Part shown: positions 1,536 through 57,645 of the stretch, piece after piece | Layout: each line of letters starts with the position of its first letter | Numbering within the stretch: the first letter of the stretch is position 1 | Virus record (IMG/VR): IMGVR_UViG_3300032236_002285 | Location: 310,001-374,000 of that record | Strand: one strand, 5' to 3' | Length of the DNA: 64,000 nucleotides | Notes under the pieces: generated by a model | Seen by the model: only the letters and a program-made list of their open reading frames with translations | What the model was told of the DNA's origin: nothing | Databases searched by the model: none | Made by a program: the position numbers and the translations under genes

Positions 1536-2063
1536 ATGAAATGGACGAATAAGCGATCGAGAATAGTCGATGCGCTTGAAAGTAACGCGCATGAGAATAA
1601 ATTGGAAAGTATGATAAGTAACTTATCACTTTTGAACTCAGATGAATTTTCAAAAGTAAAAAATCGACTACTTTTCTTGGCTTTAAAAAATGCTTCAAAA
1701 GAGTGTGCTGAATTTCTTTTAAGTAAAGAATCAAAGTTTAACTCTATTGATATATTGCGTAAGTGTGACTGGACTAAAATGGTTGAGGTATTTAATTTAT
1801 TAAAACTTCATGAAGATAAAGACGACTCAGGAAATCATAAATCACTTCAAAAAGCATATCTAATAAATCGTTTAGTTGATCCTTCAAAAGTAGATGCTAA
1901 TAAAGAAAGAGTTGATTTCTTATTCAAGTTAATATCTGATGGATTTTTTACGGCTGAACAAGTTAGAGACCAAATAGAAGAAAACTACAAAGGTAAGCCT
2001 GAAAAGAAAGGTAGTTTTATTGCCATCTACCGAGAATTGACTTTAAAAGAATTGGGTATATGA
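1536..2063 (+). CDS. Hypothetical protein with C-terminal RxxxLxxL tag (RELTLKELGI); possible ankyrin-like segment
   Basis: ORF track (TTG 1509); ATG 1536 preferred. ALKNASKECAEFLLS weakly resembles an ankyrin repeat. Confidence 0.7.
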   Translation: MKWTNKRSRIVDALESNAHENKLESMISNLSLLNSDEFSKVKNRLLFLALKNASKECAEFLLSKESKFNSIDILRKCDWTKMVEVFNLLKLHEDKDDSGNHKSLQKAYLINRLVDPSKVDANKERVDFLFKLISDGFFTAEQVRDQIEENYKGKPEKKGSFIAIYRELTLKELGI

Positions 2064-2302
2064 GAGACTTGTTTAAGATAAAAGATGAATATGCTTATCA
2101 AAGTTGGTATAGTGATGGTGTATTTGAATTAGATTATATACATAGTGATAGACATATGCCTAGTTTTGGCACTGATTGTTCTTGGACTAACTTTAAAACC
2201 AAAGAAACTATTAATATTTGGGATAGATGTATGAGAAAAATAACTGATGAAGAAGGTAAACAACTTATCAGAGAATATAATTTATCTCAATTAGGAATTT
2301 AA
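2060..2302 (+). CDS. Hypothetical protein with C-terminal tag (REYNLSQLGI)
   Basis: ORF track; ATGA overlap with the upstream gene. Confidence 0.7.
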   Translation: MRDLFKIKDEYAYQSWYSDGVFELDYIHSDRHMPSFGTDCSWTNFKTKETINIWDRCMRKITDEEGKQLIREYNLSQLGI

Positions 2303-3057
2303 TAAGCGGATTTTGTATCAGTTGATAAGTTATTTAGCTTATCAACTGCTGCATAACCCATACCAAATCTATTTACCATAGGTAACATAGAGTTAATTTG
2401 ATCAGATGTTCTAACACCACCAGAGGCTTTAATATTCATTTGCTTACCAGAATCTTTGATTGTGTCAAACATAATTTGAATCTTATTCATTTCAGCACCA
2501 ACAGCTACTTTACCGGTAGATGTTTTAATAAAATCAGCACCGGCTTCTAAACAAATATCAGTTGCTATTTTAGTTTCTTCTTCTGAAAGTAATCCAGATT
2601 CAACAATAACTTTAAGTATAACTTTTTCACCTTCTTTATTAGTATTAGAGTGACAAATATTAACCAATGAAGAAACTTCTTCAACTAAGAAATCATAATT
2701 TTCTTTCTTATTCTCAATTAACATTTTATAATTAAGAACCATATCAACCTCATCAGCACCATCAGAAATAACCTGTCTAGTTTGATCTTCTTTTTGAGTT
2801 AGTGATAAATTACCTTCTGGGAAAGAAACAACCGTACAAACTAAAACCTTTGAATGTATTAATTGTTCTTTAGCTAAGGCAACGTGTTTAGGAAGAACAC
2901 AAACTGATTTTACACCTAGCATATCAGCTTTTTTACAAAGGTTGATAATATCTGCGTCAGTTGCTGAGTCTTCTAATAAAGTATAATCAATCATGTTGTT
3001 ATACTGGAACATATTGTTCTCTTTAATAAATTGTGTGTAGTTCTTAATCTTTTTCAT
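2299..3057 (-). CDS. deoC: Deoxyribose-phosphate aldolase with N-terminal CTS-like tag
   Basis: IDYTLL, GADEVDMV, LKVIVESG, GADFIKTSTGK, IKASGGVR. Likely start MKKIKNYTQFIKE at 3057. Confidence 0.93.
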   Translation of the reverse strand: MKKIKNYTQFIKENNMFQYNNMIDYTLLEDSATDADIINLCKKADMLGVKSVCVLPKHVALAKEQLIHSKVLVCTVVSFPEGNLSLTQKEDQTRQVISDGADEVDMVLNYKMLIENKKENYDFLVEEVSSLVNICHSNTNKEGEKVILKVIVESGLLSEEETKIATDICLEAGADFIKTSTGKVAVGAEMNKIQIMFDTIKDSGKQMNIKASGGVRTSDQINSMLPMVNRFGMGYAAVDKLNNLSTDTKSAY

Positions 3058-3058
3058 A

Positions 3059-4036
3059 TTACTTTTCAAAATTTACCATTGTTTTTACAAACAACTTCAT
3101 ATCTTCAGTTGTTCTCATAATTTTAGAAACGTGAGGAAGATTCCAAGGTGAGTGACCAGAGATTTTCCACCCATCAATATACCAAGCAAACATTGGTTTA
3201 TTCAAGAATGATGTTTGTTGTAATTCGCCAAATGTACCACCACTTGTTACTTCATTGAATCCTACAAATACAGCATCACACTTGTTCACAATCAATTCAT
3301 CTTCAGGTTCAATTGTACCAGAGAAGATTCTTGATATCTCATCAAATTGTCTTGGGTCTTTAGTATCTTCATATTCACCAGATTTGAACTTACCCATTTC
3401 TTTACCAAAGTTAGGATTCTTAGTTCTATCCATTTCTTTTCTAACCGGATTAAGAACAGCTGGTCTATCATAATATTTAAGTGTGTAATTGTTACCTTCT
3501 TCAACAAATTGAGCTAAGTGTTCACCATCTACTACATAAGCAGGTTGTACTACAACATTCTGACCGTGATAAGGAATGTTAATCTTTTCCATTTCTTCAT
3601 AAGGTGAACCAGGGTTATTTACTTCAAATTCATATTCTACTTGAGCTCTCCATCCTGCGCCAACATCTTTAGCTTTATCCATACCACCGGCAAGGTATAT
3701 AGAATTTAATTCAAATGCTCTAAAGTTTTTCTTGATATCATCTAAAGTTGTTAAGTCAAAAAGGTCTAACTTACCAATCAATTCGGTATAAAATCTTTTT
3801 TTCTTGTTAACAATGTAGTTCATTATCTTTTCATCAAACCATTTAATAAGACGGTCTTTTAAGTTACTAAAGAAACCTTCATTTAGTGATTCAGTTAAAA
3901 GTGGTTGTAAATCTTTTTTAAGAGCTGGTATATCTTTTGATGAAATATTTTGAGCAATGTAATTTAGAATTGCTTCTAAATCTTTTTGTTCTTGATTATC
4001 ATACGACTCATTGAATTGTTGCCAGTTTTGGATCAT
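3059..4036 (-). CDS. Nucleoside 2-deoxyribosyltransferase-like protein with N-terminal CTS-like tag
   Basis: SIYLAGGM, KCDAVFV and TSGGTFGE motifs of the NDT/Rcl family; begins MIQNWQQFNES. Confidence 0.6.
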   Translation of the reverse strand: MIQNWQQFNESYDNQEQKDLEAILNYIAQNISSKDIPALKKDLQPLLTESLNEGFFSNLKDRLIKWFDEKIMNYIVNKKKRFYTELIGKLDLFDLTTLDDIKKNFRAFELNSIYLAGGMDKAKDVGAGWRAQVEYEFEVNNPGSPYEEMEKINIPYHGQNVVVQPAYVVDGEHLAQFVEEGNNYTLKYYDRPAVLNPVRKEMDRTKNPNFGKEMGKFKSGEYEDTKDPRQFDEISRIFSGTIEPEDELIVNKCDAVFVGFNEVTSGGTFGELQQTSFLNKPMFAWYIDGWKISGHSPWNLPHVSKIMRTTEDMKLFVKTMVNFEK

Positions 4037-4091: not shown

Positions 4092-4496
4092 ATGAAGTTA
4101 TATTATAACGGTAAAGGATATCCAGTTAAATGGAAATCTTTAATCAGAAAAGACATGTGGTATAATATGGAACCTGTAAAAATTAAATTTACACTTCCAG
4201 AATCTGTATATAAAGCTATACTTTTAGATATAAAATTAGATAATGAAAATAAAACTCTAAGAGATATTTTCAGATTTAATTTACTTTTACAAAAAGGCGA
4301 AATGTCAAGAGATAGAAATAAACTTGTTGTGGAAACAAATGAGTATTGGAAGATAGATACTTACTTAGATAGAGTTTCAACAACTTCTAAATTTAGAAAT
4401 GGAGATATTACTGCTATTTTTGAAGTTTCTATTTTTGAAGAAGAAGAATTAGACAAATCTGAACTTAGAGAAGTTTTATTAAATGAACTTGTTTAA
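4092..4496 (+). CDS. Hypothetical protein with C-terminal tag (REVLLNELV)
   Basis: ORF track extension to 4071 runs through the promoter; ATG 4092 preferred. Confidence 0.7.
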   Translation: MKLYYNGKGYPVKWKSLIRKDMWYNMEPVKIKFTLPESVYKAILLDIKLDNENKTLRDIFRFNLLLQKGEMSRDRNKLVVETNEYWKIDTYLDRVSTTSKFRNGDITAIFEVSIFEEEELDKSELREVLLNELV

Positions 4497-7117: not shown

Positions 7118-7306
7118 ATGAAAAACAAGAAAACCACTACAATAGGAAAATTTACAAAAGAAGATATTAGAAAAGCTAATAGAATGACTGGTCGTGAAAT
7201 TGACTTGGTTAATTCAGTTGGTTGGGTTGCTGTTCATAAATCTCATAAATCTGCTAAAGATTATACAAGAAAACCTAAACATAAAAAAAGCTATTCATTT
7301 GAATAG
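7118..7306 (+). CDS. Small basic protein with ArfA-like C-terminal motif
   Basis: KANR...RE and VHKSHKSAKDYTRKPKHKK, compared with ArfA KGSYxRKxKH; ends in TAG. Confidence 0.45.
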   Translation: MKNKKTTTIGKFTKEDIRKANRMTGREIDLVNSVGWVAVHKSHKSAKDYTRKPKHKKSYSFE

Positions 7307-7474
7307 CCTTTTAATTTTTTTCTTTCTTTTCTCATTGTTTAAAGCATCTTTTCCAGAGACTCTTAACTCTTTCCAATTGCTACCATCAAATACATAAGTT
7401 TTACTTTTATTAATATCATAGTAAACTTCACCGGTTGATGGACTATGAGATTCCCAAGTATTTTGAGCTATCAT
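7295..7474 (-). CDS. Small hypothetical protein (59 aa) with C-terminal tag variant (KRKKKIKRLFK)
   Basis: Not in ORF track. My translation is MIAQNTWESHSPSTGEVYYD...FDGSNWKEL...; the ATG overlaps the dnaJ stop. Confidence 0.65.
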   Translation of the reverse strand: MIAQNTWESHSPSTGEVYYDINKSKTYVFDGSNWKELRVSGKDALNNEKRKKKIKRLFK

Positions 7475-8523
7475 ACTTCAAAATTTTTAGATTTTTTTAA
7501 CTTTTCAAGAACTAATTTTTCGTCAAGTTCAATCTTCTTAGGTATTTTTACTGATATCTTGATATATAAATCACCTAAGCCATATTGTATATCAGGAATA
7601 CCCTTACCACTAATTCTAATAACTTTACCATGTTCTGTTCCTGGCTCAATAGCCACTGCCATTTCACCATGAGGTGTTTTAACTTTAACATTTGAGCCAA
7701 TAATAGCATCTATCACAGAAATAGTTTTTTCTACAATAATATTATTATTCTCTCTCTTAAATGATAAGTCTCTTTCCTCTTCAACGATAATATGTAAATC
7801 ACCTGGTTGACCATTTCTAATGTAATTACCAAAACCTGTCATATTCATTTGCATTCCATTTGAAACACCCATTGGTATTTCAACTTCTACGGTTTGATCT
7901 TTAACAATAGTACCATCACCTTTACAATCATTACATTTTGTATGAACAACTTGACCACTACCCGCACAATCTGGACAAGTTGTTGCTTGTCTTATTTGAC
8001 CAAATGGTGTATTCTGAACTACGGTTCTTTGACCACTACCATTACAAGGAATACAATTTCTAACATCTGTACCACCCTTACCATCACAAGATGTACATTT
8101 GTCTTGTCTTTTATATTTTAATTTTTTTGTGGTGCCTTTTAATATCTCATCGATTGTTAACGTGACTTTAATTCTTAAATTAGAGCCTCTACTTTGTGGT
8201 CTTTGTCCACCATATCTTTGATTGAAAGCGTTGCCAAATATATCACCAAAGTTGCTAAAAATATCTTCCATTCCACCAAAACCACCATTATATGATGAAC
8301 CGGGACCAGATGCTGATCCAAATCTATCATAATTAGATTTTTTATCTGGTGTTGATAGAACATCATAAGCTTCAGCAGCTTCTTTGAACTTAGCTTCCGA
8401 CTCAACATCTCCATCATTTTTATCTGGGTGATATTTCATAGCCATCTTACGATAAGCTTTCTTAATTTCATCCGGTGTAGCATCCTTTTCAACACCTAAT
8501 ATGTTGTAGTAATCTTTACTCAT
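7471..8523 (-). CDS. dnaJ: DnaJ chaperone
   Basis: J-domain with HPD, G/F-rich region, four CxxCxGxG repeats, C-terminal domain. Confidence 0.97.
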   Translation of the reverse strand: MSKDYYNILGVEKDATPDEIKKAYRKMAMKYHPDKNDGDVESEAKFKEAAEAYDVLSTPDKKSNYDRFGSASGPGSSYNGGFGGMEDIFSNFGDIFGNAFNQRYGGQRPQSRGSNLRIKVTLTIDEILKGTTKKLKYKRQDKCTSCDGKGGTDVRNCIPCNGSGQRTVVQNTPFGQIRQATTCPDCAGSGQVVHTKCNDCKGDGTIVKDQTVEVEIPMGVSNGMQMNMTGFGNYIRNGQPGDLHIIVEEERDLSFKRENNNIIVEKTISVIDAIIGSNVKVKTPHGEMAVAIEPGTEHGKVIRISGKGIPDIQYGLGDLYIKISVKIPKKIELDEKLVLEKLKKSKNFEV

Positions 8524-8836
8524 ATGTTAATATTTGTCTTATTTTTGAATCTCTATATATTTGTACGGGTGTTTCGGTCAGTTTTATAGTCACCCATCTA
8601 TTGTAATTTATTCTAAACTCATTTTTATAAATTTGAGCTGACATAATTGGAAGTTCTTCTATAATTTCTTTGAAGATAGTATTAGCTTCTTCTAACTTCC
8701 AATCTTTCATCTCAGTTAGCCTTTTACAGAAATAATCCATACAAGGTGAAGCCGTATCTATAACATTCCCTAAATACTTATCTCCTTTGAATCCATCTGG
8801 TGCTGATTCGGATATTTCAACATACCAATCTATCAT
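8516..8836 (-). CDS. Hypothetical protein with C-terminal tag (RDSKIRQIL)
   Basis: ORF track; in the grpE-dnaJ operon. Confidence 0.7.
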   Translation of the reverse strand: MIDWYVEISESAPDGFKGDKYLGNVIDTASPCMDYFCKRLTEMKDWKLEEANTIFKEIIEELPIMSAQIYKNEFRINYNRWVTIKLTETPVQIYRDSKIRQILTYE

Positions 8837-9432
8837 AACAACTCATCTTTATTTTCTTCAAATATTTGGTTTATATTTTCTTCTCTTTTCCATTGTTTCA
8901 ACAAACTATCAATTGCTTGATCGTAGTCATTAATATCTCTAACTCTTTGAACTAAACCAGCTACATAATTATCAACTATTAAAGTCAATGTTTCTACCGT
9001 TCTGTCAATATGTTCGAAGTGTTCTAAGCAATTTTTTGACTTGATAAACATATCAATTAGATAATCAATAAACTCATCTACATTAAAATACATAGTAAAT
9101 AACTTGTATCTTTTATTTTCTGGTAGAACTCTACCATAGTTAGAATCTTTGAAAAGAGTTGGTGGATCAATAAAGACCTTACCAAAAACTCTTCTAATAG
9201 CAGGTAGAACCAAATCCAAAGTTTCATCTTCTTCTAAATATAAGGCGCCTTTGAATTCTTCTCTATCAAATAAGTGATATTTTTTATCAATAACATATTC
9301 TAATAAAGACTTAAATGAGTTAAGATATTTACTATCTATACCCTGACAAAGTGCGTCAATTATAGTTTTTTTGTAAACTACATCTTTATAAAGATCTAAG
9401 AAACTTTTTTTATTCTCTACCTTTTTAGACAT
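8833..9432 (-). CDS. Hypothetical protein with near-C-terminal tag (REENINQIF)
   Basis: ORF track; in the grpE-dnaJ operon. Confidence 0.7.
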   Translation of the reverse strand: MSKKVENKKSFLDLYKDVVYKKTIIDALCQGIDSKYLNSFKSLLEYVIDKKYHLFDREEFKGALYLEEDETLDLVLPAIRRVFGKVFIDPPTLFKDSNYGRVLPENKRYKLFTMYFNVDEFIDYLIDMFIKSKNCLEHFEHIDRTVETLTLIVDNYVAGLVQRVRDINDYDQAIDSLLKQWKREENINQIFEENKDELL

Positions 9433-9869
9433 TATTGACCAAGAACAATTTTTGGATGTCTAAATGGTTTACCATTTAACATATAACCCTTAGTAACAAC
9501 ATCTATAACTTCTGTTTTACCAGTAGGAACTACACTAATAACTTCGTGTAACTCATCATCATAAGTTTCAGTTTGAATAGTTTCAATACCTTGAGACTTT
9601 AAAAAGTTTTCAAGTTTTTGAGCAATCAGTTGAATACCTTGTTTAGCTGATTCATCTTTAATGTTTTTAATAGCAATTGCTACATCATTATCCATATCAA
9701 GAATAGGAGTAACCATTCCAACTTTAGTATTGAATTTAATTTCTTCTTTTTCTTTTTGAACTCTTCTTTTGTAGTTTTCAAATTCAGCATAAAGACGAAC
9801 ATACTTATCTTCAGCCTCTGCCAACTTTTCAACTAATGTTTGTTCATTTTCAATTTGATTTTCTTGCAT
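9432..9869 (-). CDS. grpE: GrpE nucleotide exchange factor
   Basis: YVRLYAEFENYKRR, LHEVIS, KGYMLNGKPFRHPKIV. Confidence 0.93.
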   Translation of the reverse strand: MQENQIENEQTLVEKLAEAEDKYVRLYAEFENYKRRVQKEKEEIKFNTKVGMVTPILDMDNDVAIAIKNIKDESAKQGIQLIAQKLENFLKSQGIETIQTETYDDELHEVISVVPTGKTEVIDVVTKGYMLNGKPFRHPKIVLGQ

Positions 9870-9873
9870 AGTA

Positions 9874-10359
9874 TTAATAGTTAAATTTTAATAGTTTTCT
9901 TACATTGTTTGAGTTATAAAATTCATAAGTTACATTTTTATCTACAATCTTATGTATTTCTAATTTTTCAACCTCAATTTTCATTAATTCAACATAATCA
10001 ACCAATTCTTTAAGACATCTTGTCCAAACAGAATTTGGTTCCCAATAATCAGGAAATTTATCAACGAATTTATCAATAGCAATATCAAATGTTTTCTTTC
10101 TAACAAGTAAGTAATCTTTTTCTTTAATGGATTTATTTGTTAAGAACTCCATTATATAAGTATTGAATTTATGAATAAGATTATCTGTTTCAATAATTTT
10201 CAATAAACCTATTACCAAAGCATCTCTTTCAGAGAGTTCCATTTCTTTGTTTTCTTTTAGTAATTTCTCTGCTTCTTTCTCTGAACCAACTATGTAATAA
10301 ACATAATGATCCCACAAACACATTCTTACAATATCTTCTGGATAGATTTTAATAGTCAT
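9874..10359 (-). CDS. Hypothetical protein
   Basis: ORF track; first gene of the operon containing grpE and dnaJ. Confidence 0.7.
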   Translation of the reverse strand: MTIKIYPEDIVRMCLWDHYVYYIVGSEKEAEKLLKENKEMELSERDALVIGLLKIIETDNLIHKFNTYIMEFLTNKSIKEKDYLLVRKKTFDIAIDKFVDKFPDYWEPNSVWTRCLKELVDYVELMKIEVEKLEIHKIVDKNVTYEFYNSNNVRKLLKFNY

Positions 10360-47863: not shown

Positions 47864-48135
47864 GTAAGGAAAGAGATAAAGTACTAGTCAAAGAAACTGG
47901 TGAGATAAAAGATGTTGAAAGTCAATATGAAGTAAAGTATATTACTATGACCTTCAATTTTGATTTAACTGATGATCAAAATGATAAAATTCAACAAATG
48001 ACACTTGTTCATGATTCTGAACCTCAAGAAGAAGGTAAGCATTACACTCTTTCTGATGGTAAAGTATATCATGAAAAAGATGTAGTTGTTGGTGTGGATA
48101 ATATCCGTGAAGAAAAGTTAAAAAAGATTATATGA
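47860..48135 (+). CDS. Hypothetical protein with tag (REEKLKKII)
   Basis: ORF track. Confidence 0.7.
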   Translation: MSKERDKVLVKETGEIKDVESQYEVKYITMTFNFDLTDDQNDKIQQMTLVHDSEPQEEGKHYTLSDGKVYHEKDVVVGVDNIREEKLKKII

Positions 48136-49575: not shown

Positions 49576-49783
49576 AGTGGGAATTATATTCGGTATACTA
49601 GCATTTCTAATGTTGTTTGTTATACCATTTTTTATTAAATCTAATGATAAAATACTTGCTGGTGTTTACTTTGTTTTATTTTTAACCTGTACTGGTGTTG
49701 CTAATATAACAATGGAAAAATCAAATAAACCTATAACTCTTGAAGAAGAAAGAGAAGAAAAAATCAGGCAAATTATTAAGTGA
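49550..49783 (+). CDS. Small two-transmembrane protein with tag (REEKIRQIIK)
   Basis: Two hydrophobic segments; ATG 49550. Confidence 0.65.
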   Translation: MQKRKILSKVGIIFGILAFLMLFVIPFFIKSNDKILAGVYFVLFLTCTGVANITMEKSNKPITLEEEREEKIRQIIK

Positions 49784-50073
49784 AAGTTTATTGTAAAAGA
49801 ACCTATTTTGAGAAAAACACATATTTCTTTCCAGTAAATGGAAAAGAATATGGTCAAGATTATGTTAAGTGGGCTTGGGGTAAACTATATGAATGTAGAG
49901 AACCTGATGGTTATGAAAGAGGTGGTCATACAGAAATGTTTCCAGGAATTTATTTGTACATAGAATCTGAAGTTAAAAATACTTGGTACCCGATAAAAGA
50001 AAAGGAATTTAAAAGACACTTTGAAACTTTAGAAGAAAATCGTGATAGAAAATTAGAGCAAATTTTAAAATGA
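49780..50073 (+). CDS. Hypothetical protein with tag (RDRKLEQILK)
   Basis: ORF track. Confidence 0.7.
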   Translation: MKVYCKRTYFEKNTYFFPVNGKEYGQDYVKWAWGKLYECREPDGYERGGHTEMFPGIYLYIESEVKNTWYPIKEKEFKRHFETLEENRDRKLEQILK

Positions 50074-50825
50074 AATATTTATCAGATACAGAAATCCTTA
50101 ATTGGAATAAAAGATTAGAAAAAAGTGACTATAGTGTTTACGCTCTTTCTAATACTAGATCAGGCAATCCTGATATTGTCTTTAGACAAAAAATTAACAC
50201 TGGTTTTAATGCTATGGGTCAACAATTTGTTGAAACCTTAGATCCGTTCATTCGTTATGACTTTACATTTTCAATATCTTCTAATAGAAAAGAAACATTC
50301 TTTGATTTATTTAATAAATTATCAAAAGTAACTTTTGGTACTAAGTCTTGTTACATTGATGATAGGAGCAACTCTTATGATAGAAAGTTATCAGATATTA
50401 AATTTAATGATGATGTTATTGAAAGTAAAGAAGAAAATACTCATATGGTTTATGAAAAAGAGTATGTTAGATTCACATATCACTTTGCGGGTAAATTAGG
50501 TTCTATAATGGCTTATATTTCATATTTAGAAGATGCTATTAACTATTTGTCGGAAATGTGGGGATATAATGAAGATGGTACAGAAGTTTGTTTATTGAAA
50601 TATCCAATTGGTACAATCGTTTCTAAAAATTCTGATAAATCAACTGATTATCTAGTATTAGATTATAGATATACAAAAACAAATGGTAAATACTATATTG
50701 ATTTTATTGCTAGTGAAATGATGAATACTAAGGGTTCGGTTATAACTTACGGTGAGGTTTATACATTCACAGAGGCTGATTTGTGTTATAGTCGCAATTC
50801 AAGAATTGACGATATTTTAAATTAA
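50070..50825 (+). CDS. Hypothetical protein with tag (RNSRIDDILN)
   Basis: ORF track. Confidence 0.7.
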   Translation: MKYLSDTEILNWNKRLEKSDYSVYALSNTRSGNPDIVFRQKINTGFNAMGQQFVETLDPFIRYDFTFSISSNRKETFFDLFNKLSKVTFGTKSCYIDDRSNSYDRKLSDIKFNDDVIESKEENTHMVYEKEYVRFTYHFAGKLGSIMAYISYLEDAINYLSEMWGYNEDGTEVCLLKYPIGTIVSKNSDKSTDYLVLDYRYTKTNGKYYIDFIASEMMNTKGSVITYGEVYTFTEADLCYSRNSRIDDILN

Positions 50826-50952: not shown

Positions 50953-51396
50953 ATGATAATTAAACGAGACGATGATTTTATGGTTGGCTTATACTGGTTT
51001 TGGGATAAGTATGTTCATTATAAAACTAAAAGTAAGCGAGGTTTGCCAGAAAGATTTGAGTCTCAGTTTAATAAAATGTTAGCAATCTTAGAAGTAAAAT
51101 ATCCACATATGTCAGGCAGATGGAATGGTCAAACCAAAGCAGAGTTTGAAAAGAATTATAAAAGAGTTAAAGACATCGTTGATAAATCAACCGGTGATGA
51201 AGATAAAGCGGTCGCTTTAGCACAAACACAAGCCAACCGAATTACAGATGAATTTAAAGCCATTAATAGAGCAATGGCTGCTAAATCTATGAATCAAGAA
51301 CACATTTTTGAAGTATTCTTTCAAAGAGCTTATGAGTTAGGTTCTGTTAGTAAACAAGAGTATCGTGAATACAAATTAGAAAAGTTAGGTATTTAA
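50953..51396 (+). CDS. Hypothetical protein with tag (REYKLEKLGI)
   Basis: ORF track. Confidence 0.7.
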   Translation: MIIKRDDDFMVGLYWFWDKYVHYKTKSKRGLPERFESQFNKMLAILEVKYPHMSGRWNGQTKAEFEKNYKRVKDIVDKSTGDEDKAVALAQTQANRITDEFKAINRAMAAKSMNQEHIFEVFFQRAYELGSVSKQEYREYKLEKLGI

Positions 51397-51695
51397 TGAT
51401 AGTTAAAACTAAATTTCTTTGTAAGAGTGGTAGTAGAACTGGTTCTGGTATTGCTGGTGATGTTTGGATAGATAAGTTCATAGAAGATAAGTGGTATGAT
51501 GGTGAGTATCAAACTTGGTCATTTGAAGATGGTTACAGAATCAATGGTGGTTGGAGAAGATACTGGGCAATAAATGAGCAAGGTAAAAAAGAAGAAATCT
51601 CAAGAGCTTTGTTTAGAATAATATTTGAAACTGATATTCAACAATTAAGAGATAAAAAAATAGAAGATATAATAAATGAAAACGTTAATAGTTAA
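51396..51695 (+). CDS. Hypothetical protein with tag (RDKKIEDII)
   Basis: ORF track. Confidence 0.7.
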   Translation: MIVKTKFLCKSGSRTGSGIAGDVWIDKFIEDKWYDGEYQTWSFEDGYRINGGWRRYWAINEQGKKEEISRALFRIIFETDIQQLRDKKIEDIINENVNS

Positions 51696-52212: not shown

Positions 52213-52213
52213 T

Positions 52214-52615
52214 ATGTACGATTACGAAAATACACAGCCTAAGAATATCAATGTTTCAAAAGATTTTGTTGATATTTATACAAATTTCAACGTGGTTACT
52301 CAAGTTGAGAAGATGAAAAAATTATCTAAGAAAGAATTGTATTTATTACTAACCGTTTGCTTAGACAAGTTTTCAGATGAGGACCCAGTTGTTAAATACA
52401 ATTTACTTCCTTTCAAAGATGAATGTATGGCTATCTTTGATATTCAAGATGATAAAGAAACAACTGATGTTGATCTTATTAGTCTTATAGAAGAGTCTGG
52501 TGATAAGTATATTGAAACTGATAATATTGTTTATAATGAAGATCAGAAGCTTCCTGAACCTTTAACAAAAGAGCAAGTTCGTGATGCTAAAATAAATATC
52601 ATCAACGAAGACTAA
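52214..52615 (+). CDS. Hypothetical acidic protein with tag (RDAKINII)
   Basis: ORF track. Confidence 0.7.
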   Translation: MYDYENTQPKNINVSKDFVDIYTNFNVVTQVEKMKKLSKKELYLLLTVCLDKFSDEDPVVKYNLLPFKDECMAIFDIQDDKETTDVDLISLIEESGDKYIETDNIVYNEDQKLPEPLTKEQVRDAKINIINED

Positions 52616-52654: not shown

Positions 52655-54400
52655 ATGATGGATCAAGAAATAATCAATGAACAAGAGGTAAAACAACCAG
52701 TGATTGGTGAGTTCAAACCGAAGCGTGCTTTTCTAAACTTTGTATCGGCTGTAAACGGAGCAAGAGTTCGTTTCATCCGTGATGTCGCATTTGTGAAAGG
52801 TGAGAAGCTTTCCGGTACCTTAGAAGGTATCGTTTTCAAAATCACTATCTGTGATGAAGGTACAATTAACTTTGAAGAAGTTGATACAAATGTAACTGAT
52901 GCGGCTCAACGTCAAAGACTTATTGATGATATTGATACAACTGATGTAACTGGCTATGCTCAAAAGTATGTAGTTGCTGGTATTCAGTTCGCTGATGTTA
53001 ATGGTGACATCTGTTATCTTGAAGTTGAAGAAAAGAAACCAATTGATAAGTTGAAATCATTATTTGATGAAGAAGAAAAACCTTCTTTGTCTAATAAGGG
53101 TATGAGTTTTCTTGATGATTTGTTAAGTGGTTCTGACGAAGTTGAACCATTGGTACTTTCTGAACAAGATGCTGAAATTTTTGTAGAAGCAATTGAAAAT
53201 CCAGCAGAGCCAAATGAGAATTTGAAGAGTGCGGCTACTTCATATATGGAAGAACAATTCCGTAAGATGAATGAAGATAAAGTAAACGAATTAAAAAATC
53301 GTGTTGAAGACTCTGAAAAAGAAGTAGTTAAGTTAAAAAGAGAAATTTCAATCTCTGAAAGTAAGTTAAAAAAACAAACAGAAGATTTGAAAGTTCTTAA
53401 CTCACGTCTTGAGAGTTTAACACCAGGTGATGAACCAAATGGTTATGTTTTCTATGTTTCAGAAGAACAAAAAAATGATGTTGGTTTAGACGAATCAACC
53501 AAACACGTTGCTGATAAAATTGCTGACCTTTTAGGTCTTAAAAAAGAAGTTCTTTTTGAACAATTGACTGGTGGTTTTTACCGTATTAAGATTGCTAAGA
53601 AAGATGATATTACTAATCAAGATTTCAAATTAGAAAAAGAAATCTATGATAAGATTGCTACTATTGATGTAACAGGTAAAATGACCGTTGTTGATGGTGA
53701 ATTTGAATATCGTGGTGATATGACTTGGCATCAATTAGTTGGTAAGATGTTGCGTAAAGGTTTTGAACAAGATCCAGAATTTGACAAGTTATGTCAATCT
53801 AATTCTTATGAATCTCATGAAGAAGAAAAAACAGGTTCCTTAACAGAATCAATTCAAGAAGTTAATAAAGATATGTTGGAAAAGATTGAAGAGTTGAAAA
53901 AAGAAACAAAAAATACTTCACTTGAAATCAAGTCACAAACCGTAAGAACCTACAATGAGGAAACTACATTAGTAGTTATGGGTACAATTGACCACAATGA
54001 GAATCGTGATGTTGAGATTACTGATGATTACACCTCATTTGGAGTTTATGTTGGTGATAAAAGAATAAAAGGTTATTATGAATCTGATGGGTTTATCTCA
54101 ATTATGACTCTACCAGAATTCAAAAAGTGGCAAGCTAATTTTCCAGATGCTATGACTGATGGTGGTGCGGTGGATTCATTCTTATTACCTAACTTCAAGG
54201 GAACTATTGGTGTAACTGCTATGGTTGATGATGAATTCACTTCTGATTTTGATTTGGGTGATTATATTCAACATCAATTAGAAGATGCTGATGTGTTTTT
54301 AACACTTCCAGAAGGAACTGAGATTATGAAGATGGACGACTACCACAAAGTTCCAGTAGCCGCAATGAGAGATATTAAAATTGATAAAATTATTAAGTAA
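52655..54400 (+). CDS. Large acidic hypothetical protein with coiled coil and tag (RDIKIDKIIK)
   Basis: ORF track; TATATTTG at 52633-52640. Confidence 0.75.
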   Translation: MMDQEIINEQEVKQPVIGEFKPKRAFLNFVSAVNGARVRFIRDVAFVKGEKLSGTLEGIVFKITICDEGTINFEEVDTNVTDAAQRQRLIDDIDTTDVTGYAQKYVVAGIQFADVNGDICYLEVEEKKPIDKLKSLFDEEEKPSLSNKGMSFLDDLLSGSDEVEPLVLSEQDAEIFVEAIENPAEPNENLKSAATSYMEEQFRKMNEDKVNELKNRVEDSEKEVVKLKREISISESKLKKQTEDLKVLNSRLESLTPGDEPNGYVFYVSEEQKNDVGLDESTKHVADKIADLLGLKKEVLFEQLTGGFYRIKIAKKDDITNQDFKLEKEIYDKIATIDVTGKMTVVDGEFEYRGDMTWHQLVGKMLRKGFEQDPEFDKLCQSNSYESHEEEKTGSLTESIQEVNKDMLEKIEELKKETKNTSLEIKSQTVRTYNEETTLVVMGTIDHNENRDVEITDDYTSFGVYVGDKRIKGYYESDGFISIMTLPEFKKWQANFPDAMTDGGAVDSFLLPNFKGTIGVTAMVDDEFTSDFDLGDYIQHQLEDADVFLTLPEGTEIMKMDDYHKVPVAAMRDIKIDKIIK

Positions 54401-56518: not shown

Positions 56519-56545
56519 TAAAAAGTCCCTTTTGGGACTTTTTTG
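56519..56545 (+). terminator. Intrinsic terminator
   Basis: AAAAAGTCCC-TTTT-GGGACTTTTTT. Confidence 0.8.
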
Positions 56546-56614
56546 TTTTAAATACTTTCCTTATCTTTGTTAAATGTCGGAAGTATTCCGAGATATAAAG
56601 TTAGAATCAATAGT

Positions 56615-57181
56615 ATGAAAGTAATATTTTTAGATAATGATGGTGTAGTTTGCCTTTCCTCTGAGTGGGGTGGTCGCAAAAACAAAAAGCTAAAGTACTT
56701 GAAAGAATTTCCAGGTACTGCTGAAGAATCTATGCCTGCTTGGATAAAAATGGATAACTTTAATGACAAAGCTGTTAAGGTTCTTAATTCAATCTTAGAA
56801 CAAACTGATGCTGAGATCGTTGTTAGTTCTGATTGGAAGTTATATTGTACTTTAGAAGAACTTCAAGAAATGTTCTTAAAATATGATGTTATTAAAGCAC
56901 CAATTGATGTAACTCCAAACAAGGAACTTGCTATGCCTAAACAATGGTATGATAAAGGAGAATTAGCCGAATTTAGAGTAGGTGAAATTAATATGTGGTT
57001 AAAAGAACACCCAGAAGTAACTCAGTGGGTTGCTGTTGATGATTTGCCTTTAGGTGAATTATATGGACCAATCTCTGGTAACTTTCTTGGTGGCTTAAAG
57101 AACTTTGTCTTAACACCAAAGAGTTCTGAGGGTATTAAACAAAGTGGTATTAAAGAAAAAATATTAAAATTTTTATTGTGA
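56615..57181 (+). CDS. HAD-superfamily phosphatase (Swiss-army-knife RNA repair type)
   Basis: KVIFLDNDGV, IVVSSDW, WVAVDD; TATCTTTG at 56562-56569; ATG 56615 preferred. Confidence 0.8.
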   Translation: MKVIFLDNDGVVCLSSEWGGRKNKKLKYLKEFPGTAEESMPAWIKMDNFNDKAVKVLNSILEQTDAEIVVSSDWKLYCTLEELQEMFLKYDVIKAPIDVTPNKELAMPKQWYDKGELAEFRVGEINMWLKEHPEVTQWVAVDDLPLGELYGPISGNFLGGLKNFVLTPKSSEGIKQSGIKEKILKFLL

Positions 57182-57645
57182 TATATCGTTTAGATTTTAC
57201 CAATCTTTATGAGTGGAATAATTGTAATTCTGCTAACTCTAAGTTACTTGAAATGGTTCATAACTTAGTGCCGGATTCTTTATTACTATATCGATATAGG
57301 GTTAGGAAATCTATTGTTAATAAATATGGCGTTAATGATCCTGAGAAAATTAACTTTGATTTGATTAATCATAGATCAATTATTGTTTACCATTTAGATA
57401 TCTATAGAGAGAAACCTACTTTGATAAATGATTTAATTAAATTCTGCTTAAAAACAGATAGAGATTTGTTTATACCAACTCAACAAAATATATACTATGG
57501 TTCTGACGATAACTACAAAAAGAAACATGAATATAAACGTGATATAGCACTTGAGTTAGATGCTTATGATTATCAATACTATGATATGAATTTGGATAGC
57601 TCTTTAGTACAATTAAAAAGGGAGTTAGTTCTTAACTCCCTTTAA
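57178..57645 (+). CDS. Hypothetical protein with tag variant (KRELVLNSL)
   Basis: ORF track; GTG start overlaps the upstream stop. Confidence 0.65.
   Translation: MIYRLDFTNLYEWNNCNSANSKLLEMVHNLVPDSLLLYRYRVRKSIVNKYGVNDPEKINFDLINHRSIIVYHLDIYREKPTLINDLIKFCLKTDRDLFIPTQQNIYYGSDDNYKKKHEYKRDIALELDAYDYQYYDMNLDSSLVQLKRELVLNSL
57617..57643. terminator. Hairpin/terminator overlapping the end of the 57178 gene
   Basis: AAAGGGAGTTA-GTTCT-TAACTCCCTTT. Confidence 0.6.

What the first reader, a model, noticed from the sequence alone, without database searches (positions are those of the whole stretch)
1536..57645. About 27 unrelated proteins share a terminal amphipathic tag R-[DENQ]-x-K-[LI]-x-x-[ILV]-[LI]: candidate undescribed protein-addressing system
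Seen in sequence: proteins with otherwise unrelated sequences end in the same roughly 9-residue motif. Instances: RELTLKELGI (1536), REYNLSQLGI (2060), REVLLNELV (4092), RKKKIKRLF (7295), RDSKIRQIL (8516), REENINQIF (8833), RDWKLKKVL (26315), RNSVIDMIL (26671), RDNKLEEIL (27489), RDRKIKDIL (32488), RHIQISKIL (32947), RQLIIKKII (39514), RDMKISNLI (44488), RDNKLNKIL (46601), RESKLDTLL (47050), RDKKLNQIL (47504), REEKLKKII (47860), RQSKIDQVL (48132), REEKIRQII (49550), RDRKLEQIL (49780), RNSRIDDIL (50070), REYKLEKLG (50953), RDKKIEDII (51396), RDAKINII (52214), RDIKIDKII (52655), RELVLNSL (57178), plus one internal copy RDTQLRTIL (45244). The codons differ between copies, so this is protein-level conservation and not a DNA repeat. 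It occurs on soluble proteins, a two-TM protein and a 581-aa protein. It is absent from the recognisable enzymes and from the CTS-tagged proteins, and most carriers lie downstream of host-type or AAACTTT-class promoters. Inference: a modular docking helix, appended to diverse early proteins, that recruits them to one receptor. Candidates are a phage compartment or scaffold, a chaperone or AAA+ machine, a protease (degron) or a host complex, by analogy with encapsulin cargo peptides or T4 clamp-binding C-termini.
Basis: partly seen in the sequence, partly recalled or inferred. Interest (0 to 1): 0.9.

Follow-up and report, generated by a model that had tools for sequence, protein, structure and literature searches.

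The report
Shared C-terminal docking tag, huge phage
About a quarter of the small, otherwise unrelated proteins of this roughly 480-kb Bacteroidota phage end in the same 9-10-residue amphipathic helix; the motif is real, acts at protein level, can be moved between proteins, is confined to one phage clade and is not described in the papers searched, but its binding partner is still unknown.

Summary
The window is part of a 481-kb metagenomic huge phage related to LR745206 and LR756502.

- **Enrichment in the window:** the pattern R-[DENQ]-x-[KR]-[LI]-x-x-[ILV]-[LIF] occurs 14 times, always within 16 residues of a stop codon. Shuffled proteins give 0.18. With looser variants, including an ...L-G-I-COOH form, about 26 of 91 ORFs carry it.
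- **Enrichment in a complete relative:** LR745206 has 86-162 tagged ORFs out of 942, against 0.2-3 expected.
- **Controls are near zero:** 1,327 Bacteroidota proteins and 780 genes from AT-rich viral contigs outside the clade.
- **Protein-level signal:** synonymous codons vary as codon usage predicts.
- **Carriers:** they share no similarity outside the tag and have no Pfam domain (0 of 69 tested).
- **Conservation:** orthologues keep the tag while the flanking sequence diverges.
- **Structure:** the conserved positions lie on one face of a helix. AlphaFold2 places the tag in a terminal helix.
- **Portability:** two helicases of the clade carry the tag inside 13-14-residue insertions that related phages lack.
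- **Lineage variants:** a sister lineage uses R-K-x-x-I-x-x-L-[FIL]. The 735-kb phage uses an unrelated DPYGEExW tag.

Best reading: a portable docking helix for one shared partner. My leading candidate, unproven, is the phage's own proteostasis machinery (ClpC without its N-domain plus ClpP, or DnaK/DnaJ/GrpE). Sliding-clamp binding and DNA-level explanations are rejected.

The parts
2031..2060 (+). Tag RELTLKELGI-COOH (L-G-I variant) on the 175-aa ORF 1536-2063
   Evidence: the LGI-COOH variant recurs 23 times in LR745206
2270..2299 (+). Tag REYNLSQLGI-COOH on the 80-aa ORF 2060-2302. The next gene downstream is convergent.
4467..4493 (+). Weak tag REVLLNELV-COOH on the 134-aa ORF 4092-4496
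   Evidence: orthologue in L032 ends ...LRNILLNELV
7301..7327 (-). Weak, K-rich tag RKKKIKRLF+K on the 59-aa ORF 7295-7474, immediately downstream of dnaJ
8528..8554 (-). Tag RDSKIRQIL+TYE on the 106-aa ORF 8516-8836 (protein 'Y', between grpE and dnaJ)
   Evidence: orthologues end in RESKIRQIL, REIKLTKIL, RDSKIKQLL
8860..8886 (-). Tag REENINQIF+8 aa on the 199-aa ORF 8833-9432 (protein 'X', between grpE and dnaJ)
   Evidence: orthologues end in RDIKLSRHL, RDMKIKRMI
26642..26668 (+). Tag RDWKLKKVL+N on ORF 26315-26674
26956..26982 (+). Tag RNSVIDMIL+6 aa on ORF 26671-27003
27495..27521 (-). Tag RDNKLEEIL+K on the 167-aa ORF 27489-27992
32494..32520 (-). Tag RDRKIKDIL+K on the 142-aa ORF 32488-32916
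32950..32976 (-). Weak tag RHIQISKIL-COOH on the 181-aa ORF 32947-33492
39838..39864 (+). Weak tag RQLIIKKII-COOH on the 117-aa ORF 39514-39867
44959..44985 (+). Tag RDMKISNLI-COOH on the 166-aa ORF 44488-44988
   Evidence: all 6 orthologues are tagged
45415..45441 (+). Internal tag-like copy RDTQLRTIL in the 189-aa ORF 45244-45813; significance uncertain
47000..47026 (+). Tag RDNKLNKIL+7 aa on the 149-aa ORF 46601-47050
47422..47448 (+). Tag RESKLDTLL+7 aa on the 140-aa ORF 47050-47472
47834..47860 (+). Tag RDKKLNQIL-COOH on the 119-aa ORF 47504-47863
48106..48132 (+). Tag REEKLKKII-COOH on the 91-aa ORF 47860-48135
48684..48710 (+). Tag RQSKIDQVL+DK on the 195-aa ORF 48132-48719
49751..49777 (+). 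Tag REEKIRQII+K on the 77-aa ORF 49550-49783, which has two hydrophobic segments
50041..50067 (+). Tag RDRKLEQIL+K on ORF 49780/49936-50073
50793..50819 (+). Tag RNSRIDDIL+N on the 251-aa ORF 50070-50825. In the AlphaFold2 model the body is confident and the tag is a low-confidence terminal helix.
51364..51393 (+). Tag REYKLEKLGI-COOH on the 147-aa ORF 50953-51396
   Evidence: 17 of 19 family members match the loose pattern
51648..51674 (+). Tag RDKKIEDII+6 aa on the 99-aa ORF 51396-51695. The AlphaFold2 model is a beta domain followed by a C-terminal helix (residues 81-98) that contains the tag.
52580..52603 (+). Eight-residue variant RDAKINII+NED on the 133-aa ORF 52214-52615
54368..54394 (+). 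Tag RDIKIDKII+K on the 581-aa ORF 52655-54400. In some relatives the family member is shorter (387-436 aa) and untagged, and in L005, L006 and L023 a separate tagged ~128-aa gene follows it.
57619..57642 (+). Degenerate tag RELVLNSL-COOH on ORF 57253-57645. Orthologues carry a clear tag (RDIKLRNLF, RDLKLKKLL).
7471..10359 (-). Conserved phage chaperone operon: 161-aa ORF, GrpE (9432-9869), tagged X, tagged Y, DnaJ (7471-8523). Context for the tag and a candidate partner.
18736..20619 (+). Phage DnaK/Hsp70. The residues lining its substrate cleft are identical to those of E. coli DnaK. Candidate partner.

Best explanation
The motif is a lineage-specific short linear motif. Its consensus is (hydrophobic)-x-x-R-[D/E/N/Q]-x-[K/R]-[I/L]-x-x-[I/L/V]-[L/I], then usually one polar residue and the stop codon. 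A sub-variant ends ...L-G-I-COOH.

It forms a short amphipathic alpha-helix in which R1, K4, L5, I8 and L9 lie on one face. The helix sits exposed at the C-terminus, and occasionally in a loop or near the N-terminus, of proteins with unrelated folds. It works as a portable docking peptide: many different proteins bind one shared partner through it. These are about 29% of the ORFs in the window and 9-17% of the whole proteome of a close relative. Nearly all are small clade-specific proteins with no Pfam domain, plus two helicases.

Shown: the motif is real, is conserved at protein level, lies on one helical face, is portable and is confined to one clade.

Inferred: there is a single partner. 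It is probably phage-encoded, because sister lineages use a switched tag (R-K type) or a different one (DPYGEExW).

Leading candidate partner (my estimate about 0.3, not shown): the phage's own proteostasis machinery, above all its ClpC-type unfoldase. This ClpC lacks the usual N-terminal adaptor-binding domain but keeps the loop that docks ClpP. On this reading the tag tethers proteins to the protease, either for timed turnover or as adaptors.
For: Enrichment and specificity:
- Window: 14 strict hits against 0.18 expected, all terminal.
- LR745206: 86 strict and 162 loose terminal carriers among 942 ORFs, against 0.22 and 3.1 expected.
- Controls: 1 strict and 3 loose terminal hits in 1,327 Bacteroidota proteins; 0 in 780 genes of AT-rich viral contigs outside the clade; 0 in 50 kb of Tenacibaculum phage PTm1.

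Protein level: codon identity is 0.60 against 0.54 expected, and Arg codons mirror genome usage. There is no link to translational coupling: 12 of 26 carriers and 26 of 65 non-carriers are followed within 10 nt by a same-strand gene.

Unrelated carriers: no BLASTP similarity between them. Two AlphaFold2 models have different architectures, and neither has a significant PDB match.

Selection on the tag:
- Gene families are bimodal: nearly all members match the tag pattern or none do. Three families that match only partly carry the 8-residue or otherwise relaxed variants, or shorter untagged members.
- Within tagged families the tag is conserved while the flanks diverge.
- 39 families carry the strict tag. 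The tail after it is 1 residue in 41% of families and 0-3 residues in 77%.

Helix and exposure: conservation follows an i, i+4, i+7, i+8 pattern. The tag is a terminal helix with pLDDT below 50 on an otherwise confident 251-aa fold, and part of helix 81-98 in the 99-aa carrier.

Portability: the UvsW-like and XPD/DinG-like helicases of LR745206 and LR756502 carry the tag inside 13-14-residue insertions. LR756504 and LR756501 lack both insertions, and PTm1 lacks the UvsW one.

Lineage switch: LR756504 has 8 terminal R-K-type tags against 0.09 expected and no D-type tag. One orthologous pair differs in tag type.

Proteostasis candidate:
- The phage has ClpC (798 bits to B. subtilis ClpC residues 145-803, with the VGF loop and UVR motif present and the N-domain absent), two ClpP genes and PrkA. 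The window phage's own ClpC copy lies about 23 kb upstream of the window.
- DnaK, DnaJ and GrpE are in the window.
- Tagged small proteins sit beside each of these genes: a 115-131-aa tagged ORF directly upstream of clpC in three phages, a 210-aa ORF ending ...RDYKIQKIME after clpP, and X and Y between grpE and dnaJ.
Against: - No binding partner has been demonstrated, and no multimer prediction was available.
- Guilt by association with the clp and dnaK operons is weak when 17-29% of genes are tagged and tagged genes cluster (P(next gene is a carrier | carrier) = 0.30 against 0.17 overall).
- Clp-type ATPases and ClpP also occur in related and unrelated jumbo phages that lack the tag: LR756501, LR756508, Lak and Rak2-like phages. 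The phyletic pattern therefore does not single out ClpC.
- One-face helical conservation with an invariant Arg argues for docking in a groove, not for threading into an unfoldase pore as with ssrA-type degrons.
- A destruction signal on about 160 proteins would compete for one protease.
- A host-encoded partner cannot be excluded, because the lineages with different tags may infect different hosts.
Confidence: 0.6

Rival explanations
1. Localisation or recruitment signal. The tag brings proteins to a phage DNA-metabolism hub or to a phage-made compartment, working like a nuclear localisation signal, not as a route to degradation.
For: - The tag tolerates different positions: 13 of the 99 strict copies in LR745206 are internal or N-proximal.
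- It has been inserted into surface regions of two DNA helicases.
- It is present on 9-17% of the proteome and absent from the metabolic enzymes in the window.
Against: - Other DNA enzymes lack it: topoisomerase II subunits, 5'-3' exonuclease, UvdE, NusG and the PolB half.
- No compartment protein was identified in the sequences examined.
- Carriers include a protein with two hydrophobic segments.
Confidence: 0.2
2. Client or 'chaperone-addiction' tag for the phage-encoded Hsp70 system (DnaK/DnaJ/GrpE). The tag makes the clade-specific small proteins dependent on, or deliverable to, the phage chaperone.
For: - A complete DnaK, DnaJ and GrpE set is in the window.
- The grpE-X-Y-dnaJ operon, with both X and Y tagged, is conserved across relatives.
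- The tag contains basic and aliphatic residues and is at least partly unpacked.
- From my own knowledge, not tested here: the C-terminal ChAD extensions of toxin-antitoxin-chaperone systems are a precedent.
Against: - The residues lining the DnaK substrate cleft are identical to those of E. coli DnaK, so there is no sign of specialisation.
- From my own knowledge: DnaK binds extended peptides and disfavours acidic residues. The tag shows helical periodicity, has D/E at position 2 in 73% of families and often an acidic residue at positions 6-7.
- DnaK is shared by the wider group of related huge phages including Lak, but the tag is not.
Confidence: 0.1
3. Virion-packaging or ejection signal. 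The tag docks proteins to the prohead core or portal so that an arsenal of small proteins is injected with the DNA. This would be a C-terminal counterpart of the T4 capsid targeting sequence.
For: - Many small accessory proteins of unknown function share a short amphipathic peptide.
- From my own knowledge: the T4 capsid targeting sequence and encapsulin cargo peptides work in this way, and phage P1 packages a helicase-containing protein.
Against: - About 160 different cargo proteins is far more than any known case.
- The tag shows no protease-cleavage signature.
- Carriers include a protein with two hydrophobic segments and proteins encoded inside chaperone and protease operons.
- No virion proteomics exist.
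Confidence: 0.07
4. Self-association element or relic of common descent. The carriers descend from one expanded family, or the helix mediates homo- or hetero-oligomerisation among the carriers themselves, with no separate receptor.
For: Tagged genes cluster: P(next gene is a carrier | carrier) is 0.30 against 0.17 overall. From my own knowledge: large viruses often expand gene families.
Against: - There is no detectable similarity outside the tag.
- The two models have clearly different architectures.
- The tag has been inserted into pre-existing helicases.
- A helix of 9-12 residues is too short to self-associate stably.
Confidence: 0.05
5. Sliding-clamp-binding motif resembling a PIP box ([DENQ]-x-x-[LI]-x-x-[ILV]-[LI]).
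For: The spacing matches Q-x-x-[LIM]-x-x-[FY]-[FY] (from my own knowledge), the motif is mostly C-terminal, and it occurs on two helicases.
Against: - The C-terminal half of PolB in LR745206 ends ...VMDIFGGFK, a T4-like aromatic clamp tail and not the tag.
- The 5'-3' exonuclease and the topoisomerase subunits have no tag.
- Aromatic residues are rare in the tag: F occupies position 9 in 9% of families.
- None of 69 carriers tested has a recognisable replication domain.
Confidence: 0.02
6. Nucleic-acid-level signal (ribosome-binding site, translational coupling, terminator or repeat) that merely reads as a peptide.
For: Many carrier stop codons overlap the next start codon. Synonymous-codon identity is slightly raised at positions 8-9.
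Against: - Arg is encoded by both AGA/AGG and CGN codons.
- Overall codon identity is about what codon usage predicts.
- The tag also occurs before convergent genes and before long gaps, and carriers are no more often followed by a coupled gene than non-carriers.
- All 13 hits of the back-translated DNA pattern in the window are tags in the reading frame of their carrier genes.
Confidence: 0.01

Closest known systems
C-terminal degrons and protease tethers of bacterial AAA+ proteases (ssrA tag, MuA-type C-motif 2, the SspB C-terminal peptide that binds the ClpX N-domain, MecA-ClpC)
   Same: A short peptide at or near the C-terminus of otherwise unrelated proteins addresses them to one machine. 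The phage encodes a ClpC-type unfoldase with a ClpP-docking loop, and two ClpP genes.
   Different: - The sequence is unrelated to any of these.
- Conservation is helical and one-faced with an invariant Arg, not an extended nonpolar end.
- The tail after the tag varies from 0 to 10 residues, and internal copies exist.
- The phage ClpC lacks the N-domain that known adaptors use.
- No degradation has been shown.
Chaperone-addiction (ChAD) C-terminal extensions of toxin-antitoxin-chaperone systems
   Same: A transferable C-terminal segment on unrelated proteins is recognised by a dedicated chaperone. Here the phage encodes its own chaperones.
   Different: ChAD binds a SecB-like chaperone. No SecB-like gene was seen in the part of the genome I examined. 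The tag is on about 160 proteins, not on one antitoxin. No sequence similarity is known.
T4 capsid targeting sequence and encapsulin cargo-loading peptides
   Same: A short terminal peptide is shared by unrelated cargo proteins and docks them to one assembly.
   Different: The T4 sequence is N-terminal and is cleaved at L/I-x-E. Encapsulin peptides are extended and rich in Gly, Ser and Leu. Nothing here shows that the carriers are in the virion.
PIP-box and T4 gp43-type sliding-clamp-binding tails
   Same: Mostly C-terminal, with the same h-x-x-h-h spacing and a polar residue three positions before.
   Different: The tag is aliphatic, not aromatic. The clade's polymerase carries a separate T4-like aromatic tail. 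The tag is absent from the replication enzymes apart from the two helicase insertions.
Poxvirus ankyrin/PRANC (F-box-like) proteins; MIM helix binding to the Vps4 MIT domain
   Same: Many diverse viral proteins share a small C-terminal docking element for one degradation or remodelling machine. In the MIM case a C-terminal amphipathic helix binds the N-domain of an AAA+ enzyme.
   Different: Those are eukaryotic systems with different sequences and folds. The resemblance is an analogy of logic only.
C-terminal helix of the primary sigma factor (from memory: E. coli ...RSEVLRSFLDD, B. subtilis ...RSKRLKDFLE), which docks on the RNA polymerase beta-flap and on T4 MotA
   Same: Same spacing: R1, [K/R or V]4, L5, F8, L9, an acidic residue at 10, then the stop.
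   Different: This is recalled from memory and was not tested. No Bacteroidota sigma sequence could be retrieved. Position 2 is not acidic in sigma. One RNA polymerase site is an unlikely target for about 160 proteins.

Membership tests
PIP-box / phage clamp-binding tail | Present on the replicative polymerase and the flap endonuclease of the same genome | tested here: not met
   The PolB C-terminal half of LR745206 ends ...VMDIFGGFK (aromatic, T4-like), not the tag. The window's 5'-3' exonuclease (30567-31538) has no tag.
PIP-box / phage clamp-binding tail | Two aromatic residues at the last two motif positions | tested here: not met
   Position 8 is I, L or V in 100% of families. Position 9 is L 77%, I 14%, F 9%.
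ssrA-type C-terminal degron | Fixed distance to the free carboxylate, with a nonpolar end (e.g. LAA-COOH) | tested here: not met
   The tail after the tag is 0-10 residues, most often a single polar residue (K, D or N). 13 of 99 strict copies are internal.
ssrA-type C-terminal degron | Tag-dependent degradation by a Clp or other AAA+ protease | not testable with these tools
   This needs a biochemical assay. The phage does encode ClpC and ClpP.
Hsp70 (DnaK) client motif | Core of 4-5 consecutive hydrophobic residues bound in extended form, flanked by basic residues, with acidic residues disfavoured (from my own knowledge of DnaK specificity) | tested here: not met
   The hydrophobic residues are at positions 5, 8 and 9 only. 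D/E occupies position 2 in 73% of families and is frequent at positions 6-7. Conservation has helical periodicity.
Hsp70 (DnaK) client motif | A specialised Hsp70 with an altered substrate cleft, as in dedicated Hsp70s | tested here: not met
   The cleft residues equivalent to E. coli I401, T403, M404, F426, S427, A429, Q433, V436 and I438 are all identical.
T4 capsid targeting sequence | N-terminal position followed by a prohead-protease site (L/I-x-E) | tested here: not met
   The tag is C-terminal in 86 of 99 strict copies, and no conserved E follows it.
Type IX secretion C-terminal domain (Bacteroidota) | A C-terminal beta-sandwich domain of about 80 residues, detectable by Pfam, on proteins with a signal peptide | tested here: not met
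   The tag is 9-10 residues and helical. No carrier has a Pfam hit above the curated cutoff. A true CHU_C domain is present on a different window protein, 10982-13789. Only one carrier has strongly hydrophobic segments.
Membrane-targeting amphipathic helix (MinD/FtsA type) | Four or more large hydrophobic residues with a net basic charge and no conserved acidic residue | tested here: not met
   There are only three aliphatic positions, and position 2 is conserved as D, E or N.
Generic short linear docking motif (what I file it under) | Short, conserved across orthologues while the flanks diverge, present on unrelated folds, located in an exposed or poorly packed segment, and transferable | tested here: met
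Generic short linear docking motif (what I file it under) | A defined binding partner | not testable with these tools
   No multimer prediction or binding assay was available.

The most novel reading that the evidence does not exclude
Huge phages of this group run a private proteome-addressing code. Each lineage has its own short tag: R-D-x-K-L-x-x-I-L here, R-K-x-K-I-x-x-L-L in LR756504 and DPYGEExW in the 735-kb phage. The tag routes a tenth to a sixth of the proteome, almost all of it small clade-specific proteins of unknown function, to a phage-encoded proteostasis machine (ClpC without its N-domain plus ClpP, possibly together with DnaK/DnaJ/GrpE). The result would be either programmed turnover of takeover proteins or a large family of adaptors that deliver host targets to a viral protease.
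Probability: 0.2. Interest if true: 0.9.

Novelty: new variant of a known kind. Interest (0 to 1): 0.78.

Why it matters
Most genes of huge phages have no known function. A single tag that marks 86-162 of the 942 ORFs of one genome gives a handle on that unknown fraction. It defines a functional class and predicts a common partner that can be fished out with one synthetic peptide. It also offers a portable tag for experiments.

If the partner is the phage's own ClpC-ClpP or Hsp70 system, this would be, as far as I know, the first case of a virus of bacteria running its own substrate-addressing system for protein quality control or timed turnover. It would also give a function to the Clp and Hsp70 genes that are widespread in jumbo phages and, as far as I know, unexplained.

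Sister lineages use different tags. That suggests tag and receptor evolve together, and that terminal tagging may be a general and overlooked feature of very large phage genomes.

Tried and rejected
1. **DNA repeat, ribosome-binding site or coupling artefact: rejected.** Codon analysis and neighbour analysis both argue against it.
2. **Hidden paralogy: not found.** All-against-all BLASTP after trimming the tag gave nothing between carriers at E<0.1.
3. **Known domains in carriers: none.** Pfam on 26 window carriers and on the 43 largest LR745206 carriers gave no hit above the curated cutoffs.
4. **Fold assignment: no result.** Foldseek against the PDB for two confident models gave no significant match.
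5. **Promoter class or 'early' genes: no association.** The Bacteroidota -7 motif TAnnTTTG is not significantly associated with carriers.
6. **Specialised DnaK: not seen.** The substrate cleft is canonical.
7. **Sliding clamp: rejected**.
8. **DUF2201 metallopeptidase/VWA protein as co-occurring receptor: uninformative.** Homologues also occur in LR756504 and LR756501.
9. **ClpC or ClpP phyletic correlation: uninformative.** Both occur widely in jumbo phages that lack the tag. Within the ClpC tree the tag is sharply confined to contigs with at least about 67% identity, but this only restates the clade.
10. **Sigma-factor tail mimicry: could not be tested.** No rpoD gene was found in the fetched bacterial loci.
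11. **A cultured relative carrying the tag: not found.** Tenacibaculum phage PTm1 has none in 50 kb, and no cultured phage has homologues of a conserved carrier.
12. **Literature: nothing found.** Five full-text searches found no description of either motif. The 'moraphage' paper PMC12619734 reports DnaK and DnaJ in Bacteroidota jumbo phages but no such motif.

Full report
**What the window is.** The window has about 30% G+C and no tRNA genes. An exact-protein look-up places it on a 481,145-bp JGI metagenome contig, held as a 476-kb IMG/VR genome, at about 310-374 kb. The only related GenBank phages are the uncultured 634-kb LR745206 and 642-kb LR756502. LR745206 is syntenic with the window over the tag-rich region. 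The closest cellular relatives of the phage DnaK are all Bacteroidota, at 65-73% identity. One window protein carries a type IX secretion CHU_C domain. The host is therefore very probably a member of the Bacteroidota.

Recognisable window genes include:
- ribonucleotide reductase small subunit, DeoC, two RNA ligases and an HD-domain protein;
- an amidase, UvdE, a thioesterase and a DOT1-like methyltransferase;
- HNH, NusG, a 5'-3' exonuclease and both topoisomerase II subunits;
- a glycosyltransferase, a rhomboid protease, an N6/N4 methyltransferase and a DUF2201 metallopeptidase/VWA protein;
- a complete DnaK, DnaJ and GrpE set.

**Checking the observation.** The coordinates given are the gene starts; the motifs lie 0-10 residues before the stop codons.
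- The strict pattern R[DENQ].[KR][LI]..[ILV][LIF] matches 14 times in 89 called proteins. Every match is in the last 16 residues. Shuffling each protein 500 times gives 0.18 matches, with a maximum of 2.
- A looser pattern gives 22 terminal matches against 0.22 expected.
- A degenerate back-translation of the motif gives 13 matches in the window against 1.0 expected, 10 against 0.83 in a 41-kb piece of LR745206, and 5 against 0.61 in LR756502.
- With the ...L-G-I-COOH and eight-residue variants included, about 26 of 91 ORFs carry the tag.
For three there is supporting sequence in relatives. Several orthologues of RELVLNSL carry a clearer tag. One orthologue of REVLLNELV keeps a similar ending. 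The gene in the same position after dnaJ in L033 ends like RKKKIKRLF, although homology was not detected.

**It is a protein-level signal.**
- The invariant Arg is encoded by AGA, AGG, CGT, CGA and CGC.
- In the 86 strict terminal tags of LR745206, Arg codon use mirrors the genome. The fraction of identical codons at identical residues is 0.60 against 0.54 expected from codon usage, with a small excess only at the last two positions.
- Carriers are no more often followed by an overlapping or adjacent same-strand gene than non-carriers (12 of 26 against 26 of 65). The tag also precedes convergent genes and long gaps.

**The carriers are unrelated and uncharacterised.**
- After the tag is trimmed, no pair of carriers gives a BLASTP hit below E=0.1.
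- None of 26 window carriers and none of the 43 largest LR745206 carriers has a Pfam hit above the curated cutoffs. Most of the larger non-carriers tested do.
- A 251-aa carrier has 240 metagenomic homologues. All of the 120 best listed are unnamed or 'hypothetical protein' and are at least 73% identical.
- Two AlphaFold2 models differ in architecture: an alpha/beta fold of 251 residues (pLDDT 85) and a small beta-rich domain of 99 residues (pLDDT 82.5). Neither has a significant PDB match.

**Scale and limits.**
- I stitched the complete LR745206 genome (634,780 bp, 942 ORFs by my simple caller). It has 99 strict matches, 86 of them terminal, against 1.8 and 0.22 in shuffles. 162 ORFs have a loose terminal match against 3.1 expected.
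- The tag is on 24-31% of proteins shorter than 160 residues and on 1-3% of those longer than 250.
- Controls are near zero. 1,327 proteins from 80 Bacteroidota loci give 1 strict and 3 loose terminal matches. Viral loci holding a DnaJ only distantly related to the window's (35% identity or less), many of them AT-rich, give almost none. 50 kb of the cultured Tenacibaculum jumbo phage PTm1 gives none.
- Among 80 viral contigs fetched with the phage ClpC, tags occur where ClpC is at least about 67% identical (50 loose terminal in 1,006 genes). They are absent from the 780 genes on contigs with ClpC at 64% identity or less.

The tag is thus a sharply bounded trait of one clade.

**Anatomy.** Across 39 gene families carrying the strict tag:

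| Position | Residues (% of families) |
|---|---|
| 1 | R 100% |
| 2 | D 38%, E 35%, N 18%, Q 9% |
| 4 | K 85%, R 15% |
| 5 | I 50%, L 50% |
| 8 | I 64%, L 26%, V 10% |
| 9 | L 77%, I 14%, F 9% |
| 10 | polar |

- Positions 1 to 9 were partly fixed by the search pattern, so only the proportions within each allowed set are informative.
- The stop codon follows after one residue in 41% of families and after 0-3 residues in 77%.
- Hydrophobic residues are also enriched at positions -4 and -1.
- Positions 1, 5, 8 and 9 are i, i+4, i+7 and i+8, which is one face of an alpha-helix.
- In the 251-aa model the last 7 residues have pLDDT below 50 on an otherwise confident fold, and the tag forms a short helix at 243-250. 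In the 99-aa model the tag lies in the C-terminal helix 81-98.

**Selection and portability.**
- Gene families are bimodal: nearly all members match the tag pattern or none do. Three families that match only partly carry the 8-residue or otherwise relaxed variants, or shorter untagged members. Within tagged families the tag is conserved while neighbouring residues change.
- In the family of the 581-aa protein, several relatives have a shorter, untagged member (387-436 aa). In L005, L006 and L023 a separate tagged gene of about 128 aa follows it. I did not test whether that small gene is homologous to the C-terminal part of the 581-aa protein.
- Thirteen strict copies in LR745206 are not terminal. 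Two of these lie in helicases, one UvsW-like and one XPD/DinG-like.
- Alignment with orthologues shows that each helicase copy sits in a 13-14-residue insertion found only in the tag-bearing genomes LR745206 and LR756502. LR756504 and LR756501 lack both insertions, and PTm1 lacks the UvsW one.

A free C-terminus is therefore not required, and the element can be grafted into existing proteins.

**Lineage-specific versions.**
- LR756504 (636 kb) has no D/E-type tags in 84 kb examined. It has 8 terminal R-K-x-x-[IL]-x-x-[ILV]-[LIFY] tags against 0.09 expected.
- One orthologous pair shows ...RKAIINDLI in LR756504 against ...RDDQLIKLL in LR745206.
- The 735-kb LR756501 has essentially no tag of either type (a single strict terminal match in 110 genes). 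It carries a different recurrent motif, D-P-Y-G-E-E-x-W: 10 copies in 68 kb, half of them at C-termini.
- The sampled regions of LR756508 and Lak-A1 show no enrichment of the tag: none in LR756508 and one loose terminal match in Lak-A1.

**What it is not.**
- **Not a clamp-binding tail.** The C-terminal half of PolB in LR745206 ends ...VMDIFGGFK, a T4-like aromatic tail. The 5'-3' exonuclease and topoisomerase subunits are untagged.
- **Not a type IX secretion domain, a T4-type capsid targeting sequence or a membrane-targeting helix.** See the membership tests.
- **Not tied to the Bacteroidota -7 promoter motif**.

**Who might read the tag.** No tool here could test binding, so this part is inference. 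Close relatives, and the window's own phage about 23 kb upstream of the window, encode a ClpC orthologue.
- It scores 798 bits to B. subtilis ClpC residues 145-803.
- It retains the UVR-type middle domain and the VGF loop that docks ClpP.
- It lacks the N-terminal domain that known adaptors bind. An acidic segment of about 40 residues stands in its place.

LR745206 also encodes two ClpP proteins and PrkA. Tagged small proteins sit next to each proteostasis gene:
- a 115-131-aa protein ending R-[ED]-x-I-[IL]-x-x-[IVL]-L directly upstream of clpC in three phages;
- a 210-aa protein ending ...RDYKIQKIME directly after clpP;
- two tagged proteins between grpE and dnaJ, in an operon conserved down to 51% DnaJ identity.

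With 17-29% of genes tagged and tagged genes clustering, this association is suggestive at best. Clp ATPases and ClpP also occur in jumbo phages without the tag.

The substrate cleft of the phage DnaK is identical to that of E. coli DnaK. The tag's helical periodicity and its conserved acidic residue do not fit the DnaK binding rules as I know them.

My ranking is:

| Reading | Estimate |
|---|---|
| Docking helix for one shared partner | 0.6 |
| ...with ClpC-ClpP as that partner | about 0.3 |
| Localisation or recruitment signal | 0.2 |
| Hsp70 client tag | 0.1 |
| Virion packaging signal | 0.07 |
| Self-association or relic of common descent | 0.05 |
| Sliding-clamp binding | 0.02 |
| DNA-level signal | 0.01 |

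One lead comes from memory only. The C-terminal helix of primary sigma factors has the same spacing and is a known docking peptide. I could not retrieve a Bacteroidota sigma sequence to test this.

**Novelty.** Five full-text searches found no description of this motif or of DPYGEExW. A 2025 paper on Bacteroidota jumbo phages notes DnaK and DnaJ but no such motif. The general idea, a shared terminal peptide that addresses unrelated proteins to one machine, is well known. This sequence, its scale, its restriction to clade-specific proteins of unknown function and its lineage-specific switching appear to be undescribed.

Noticed in passing
L030 (LR756501 158322-199611, reverse complement) and L025 (LR756501 1-27420), e.g. 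L030 1585-1752, 1749-1982, 2822-3073, 36124-37710: The 735-kb phage carries a different recurrent short motif, D-P-Y-G-E-E-x-W-[DSNE]. There are 10 copies in about 68 kb on different proteins. Five lie within 3 residues of the stop codon; the others are near N-termini or internal. It is absent from the window and from the other loci held when it was searched (L001-L030).
   Followed up: partly
L026 and L029 (LR756504), e.g. L026 6341-6562, 24871-25248; L029 13624-13944, 27382-28077: A sister lineage uses an R-K-x-x-I-x-x-[LI]-[FLI] version of the tag: 8 terminal copies against 0.09 expected, and no D/E-type tag. One orthologous pair differs only in tag type.
   Followed up: yes
window 7471-10359 (-) and 18736-20619 (+): The phage encodes a complete Hsp70 system: GrpE 9432-9869, a full type-I DnaJ 7471-8523 and DnaK 18736-20619. 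The operon order 161-aa ORF, grpE, X, Y, dnaJ is conserved in relatives.
   Followed up: yes
L167 9977-12109 (window phage, about 23 kb upstream of the window); LR745206 423224-425329, 123556-124221, 75119-75859, 480112-482034: The phage encodes a ClpC without its N-domain (VGF ClpP-docking loop and UVR middle domain kept, acidic N-terminal segment). The relative LR745206 also has two ClpP paralogues and a PrkA-type kinase.
   Followed up: partly
LR745206 130568-131992 (-) and 83154-83393 (+): The family-B DNA polymerase appears to be split: a 474-aa C-terminal half contains YGDTDS. Separately, a 79-aa ORF contains the polymerase SLYPS motif followed by a tag-like ...RRKKKIQKVF tail.
   Followed up: no
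window 10982-13789 (+): A 935-aa phage protein has PKD and Ig-like repeats and a CHU_C type IX secretion signal domain. This is a host-type secretion signal on a phage gene.
   Followed up: no
window 59363-63286 (+): A 1,307-aa protein contains collagen triple-helix repeats. It is probably a fibre or other virion-surface protein.
   Followed up: no
window 27995-28720 (-), 29614-30162 (-), 40060-40623 (+): Three unusual phage genes: a DOT1-like methyltransferase, a NusG homologue (NGN plus KOW domains) and a rhomboid intramembrane protease.
   Followed up: no
window 54935-56518 (+): The DUF2201 metallopeptidase/VWA gene is the only stretch of window 44000-58000 that matches GenBank phages at DNA level (about 80% identity, to LR745206 and LR756502). 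Protein homologues reach the 735-kb phage.
   Followed up: partly
window 26315-26674 (+) against 25513-26439 (+): The tagged ORF, counted from its first ATG, overlaps the 3' end of uvdE by 125 nt in another frame. Its true start is probably further downstream.
   Followed up: no
window 6247-7050 (-): A 267-aa protein without a Pfam hit is as conserved among relatives (75-84% identity) as DnaK. It weakly matches the C-terminal part of a PHROG annotated as a head-tail adaptor.
   Followed up: partly
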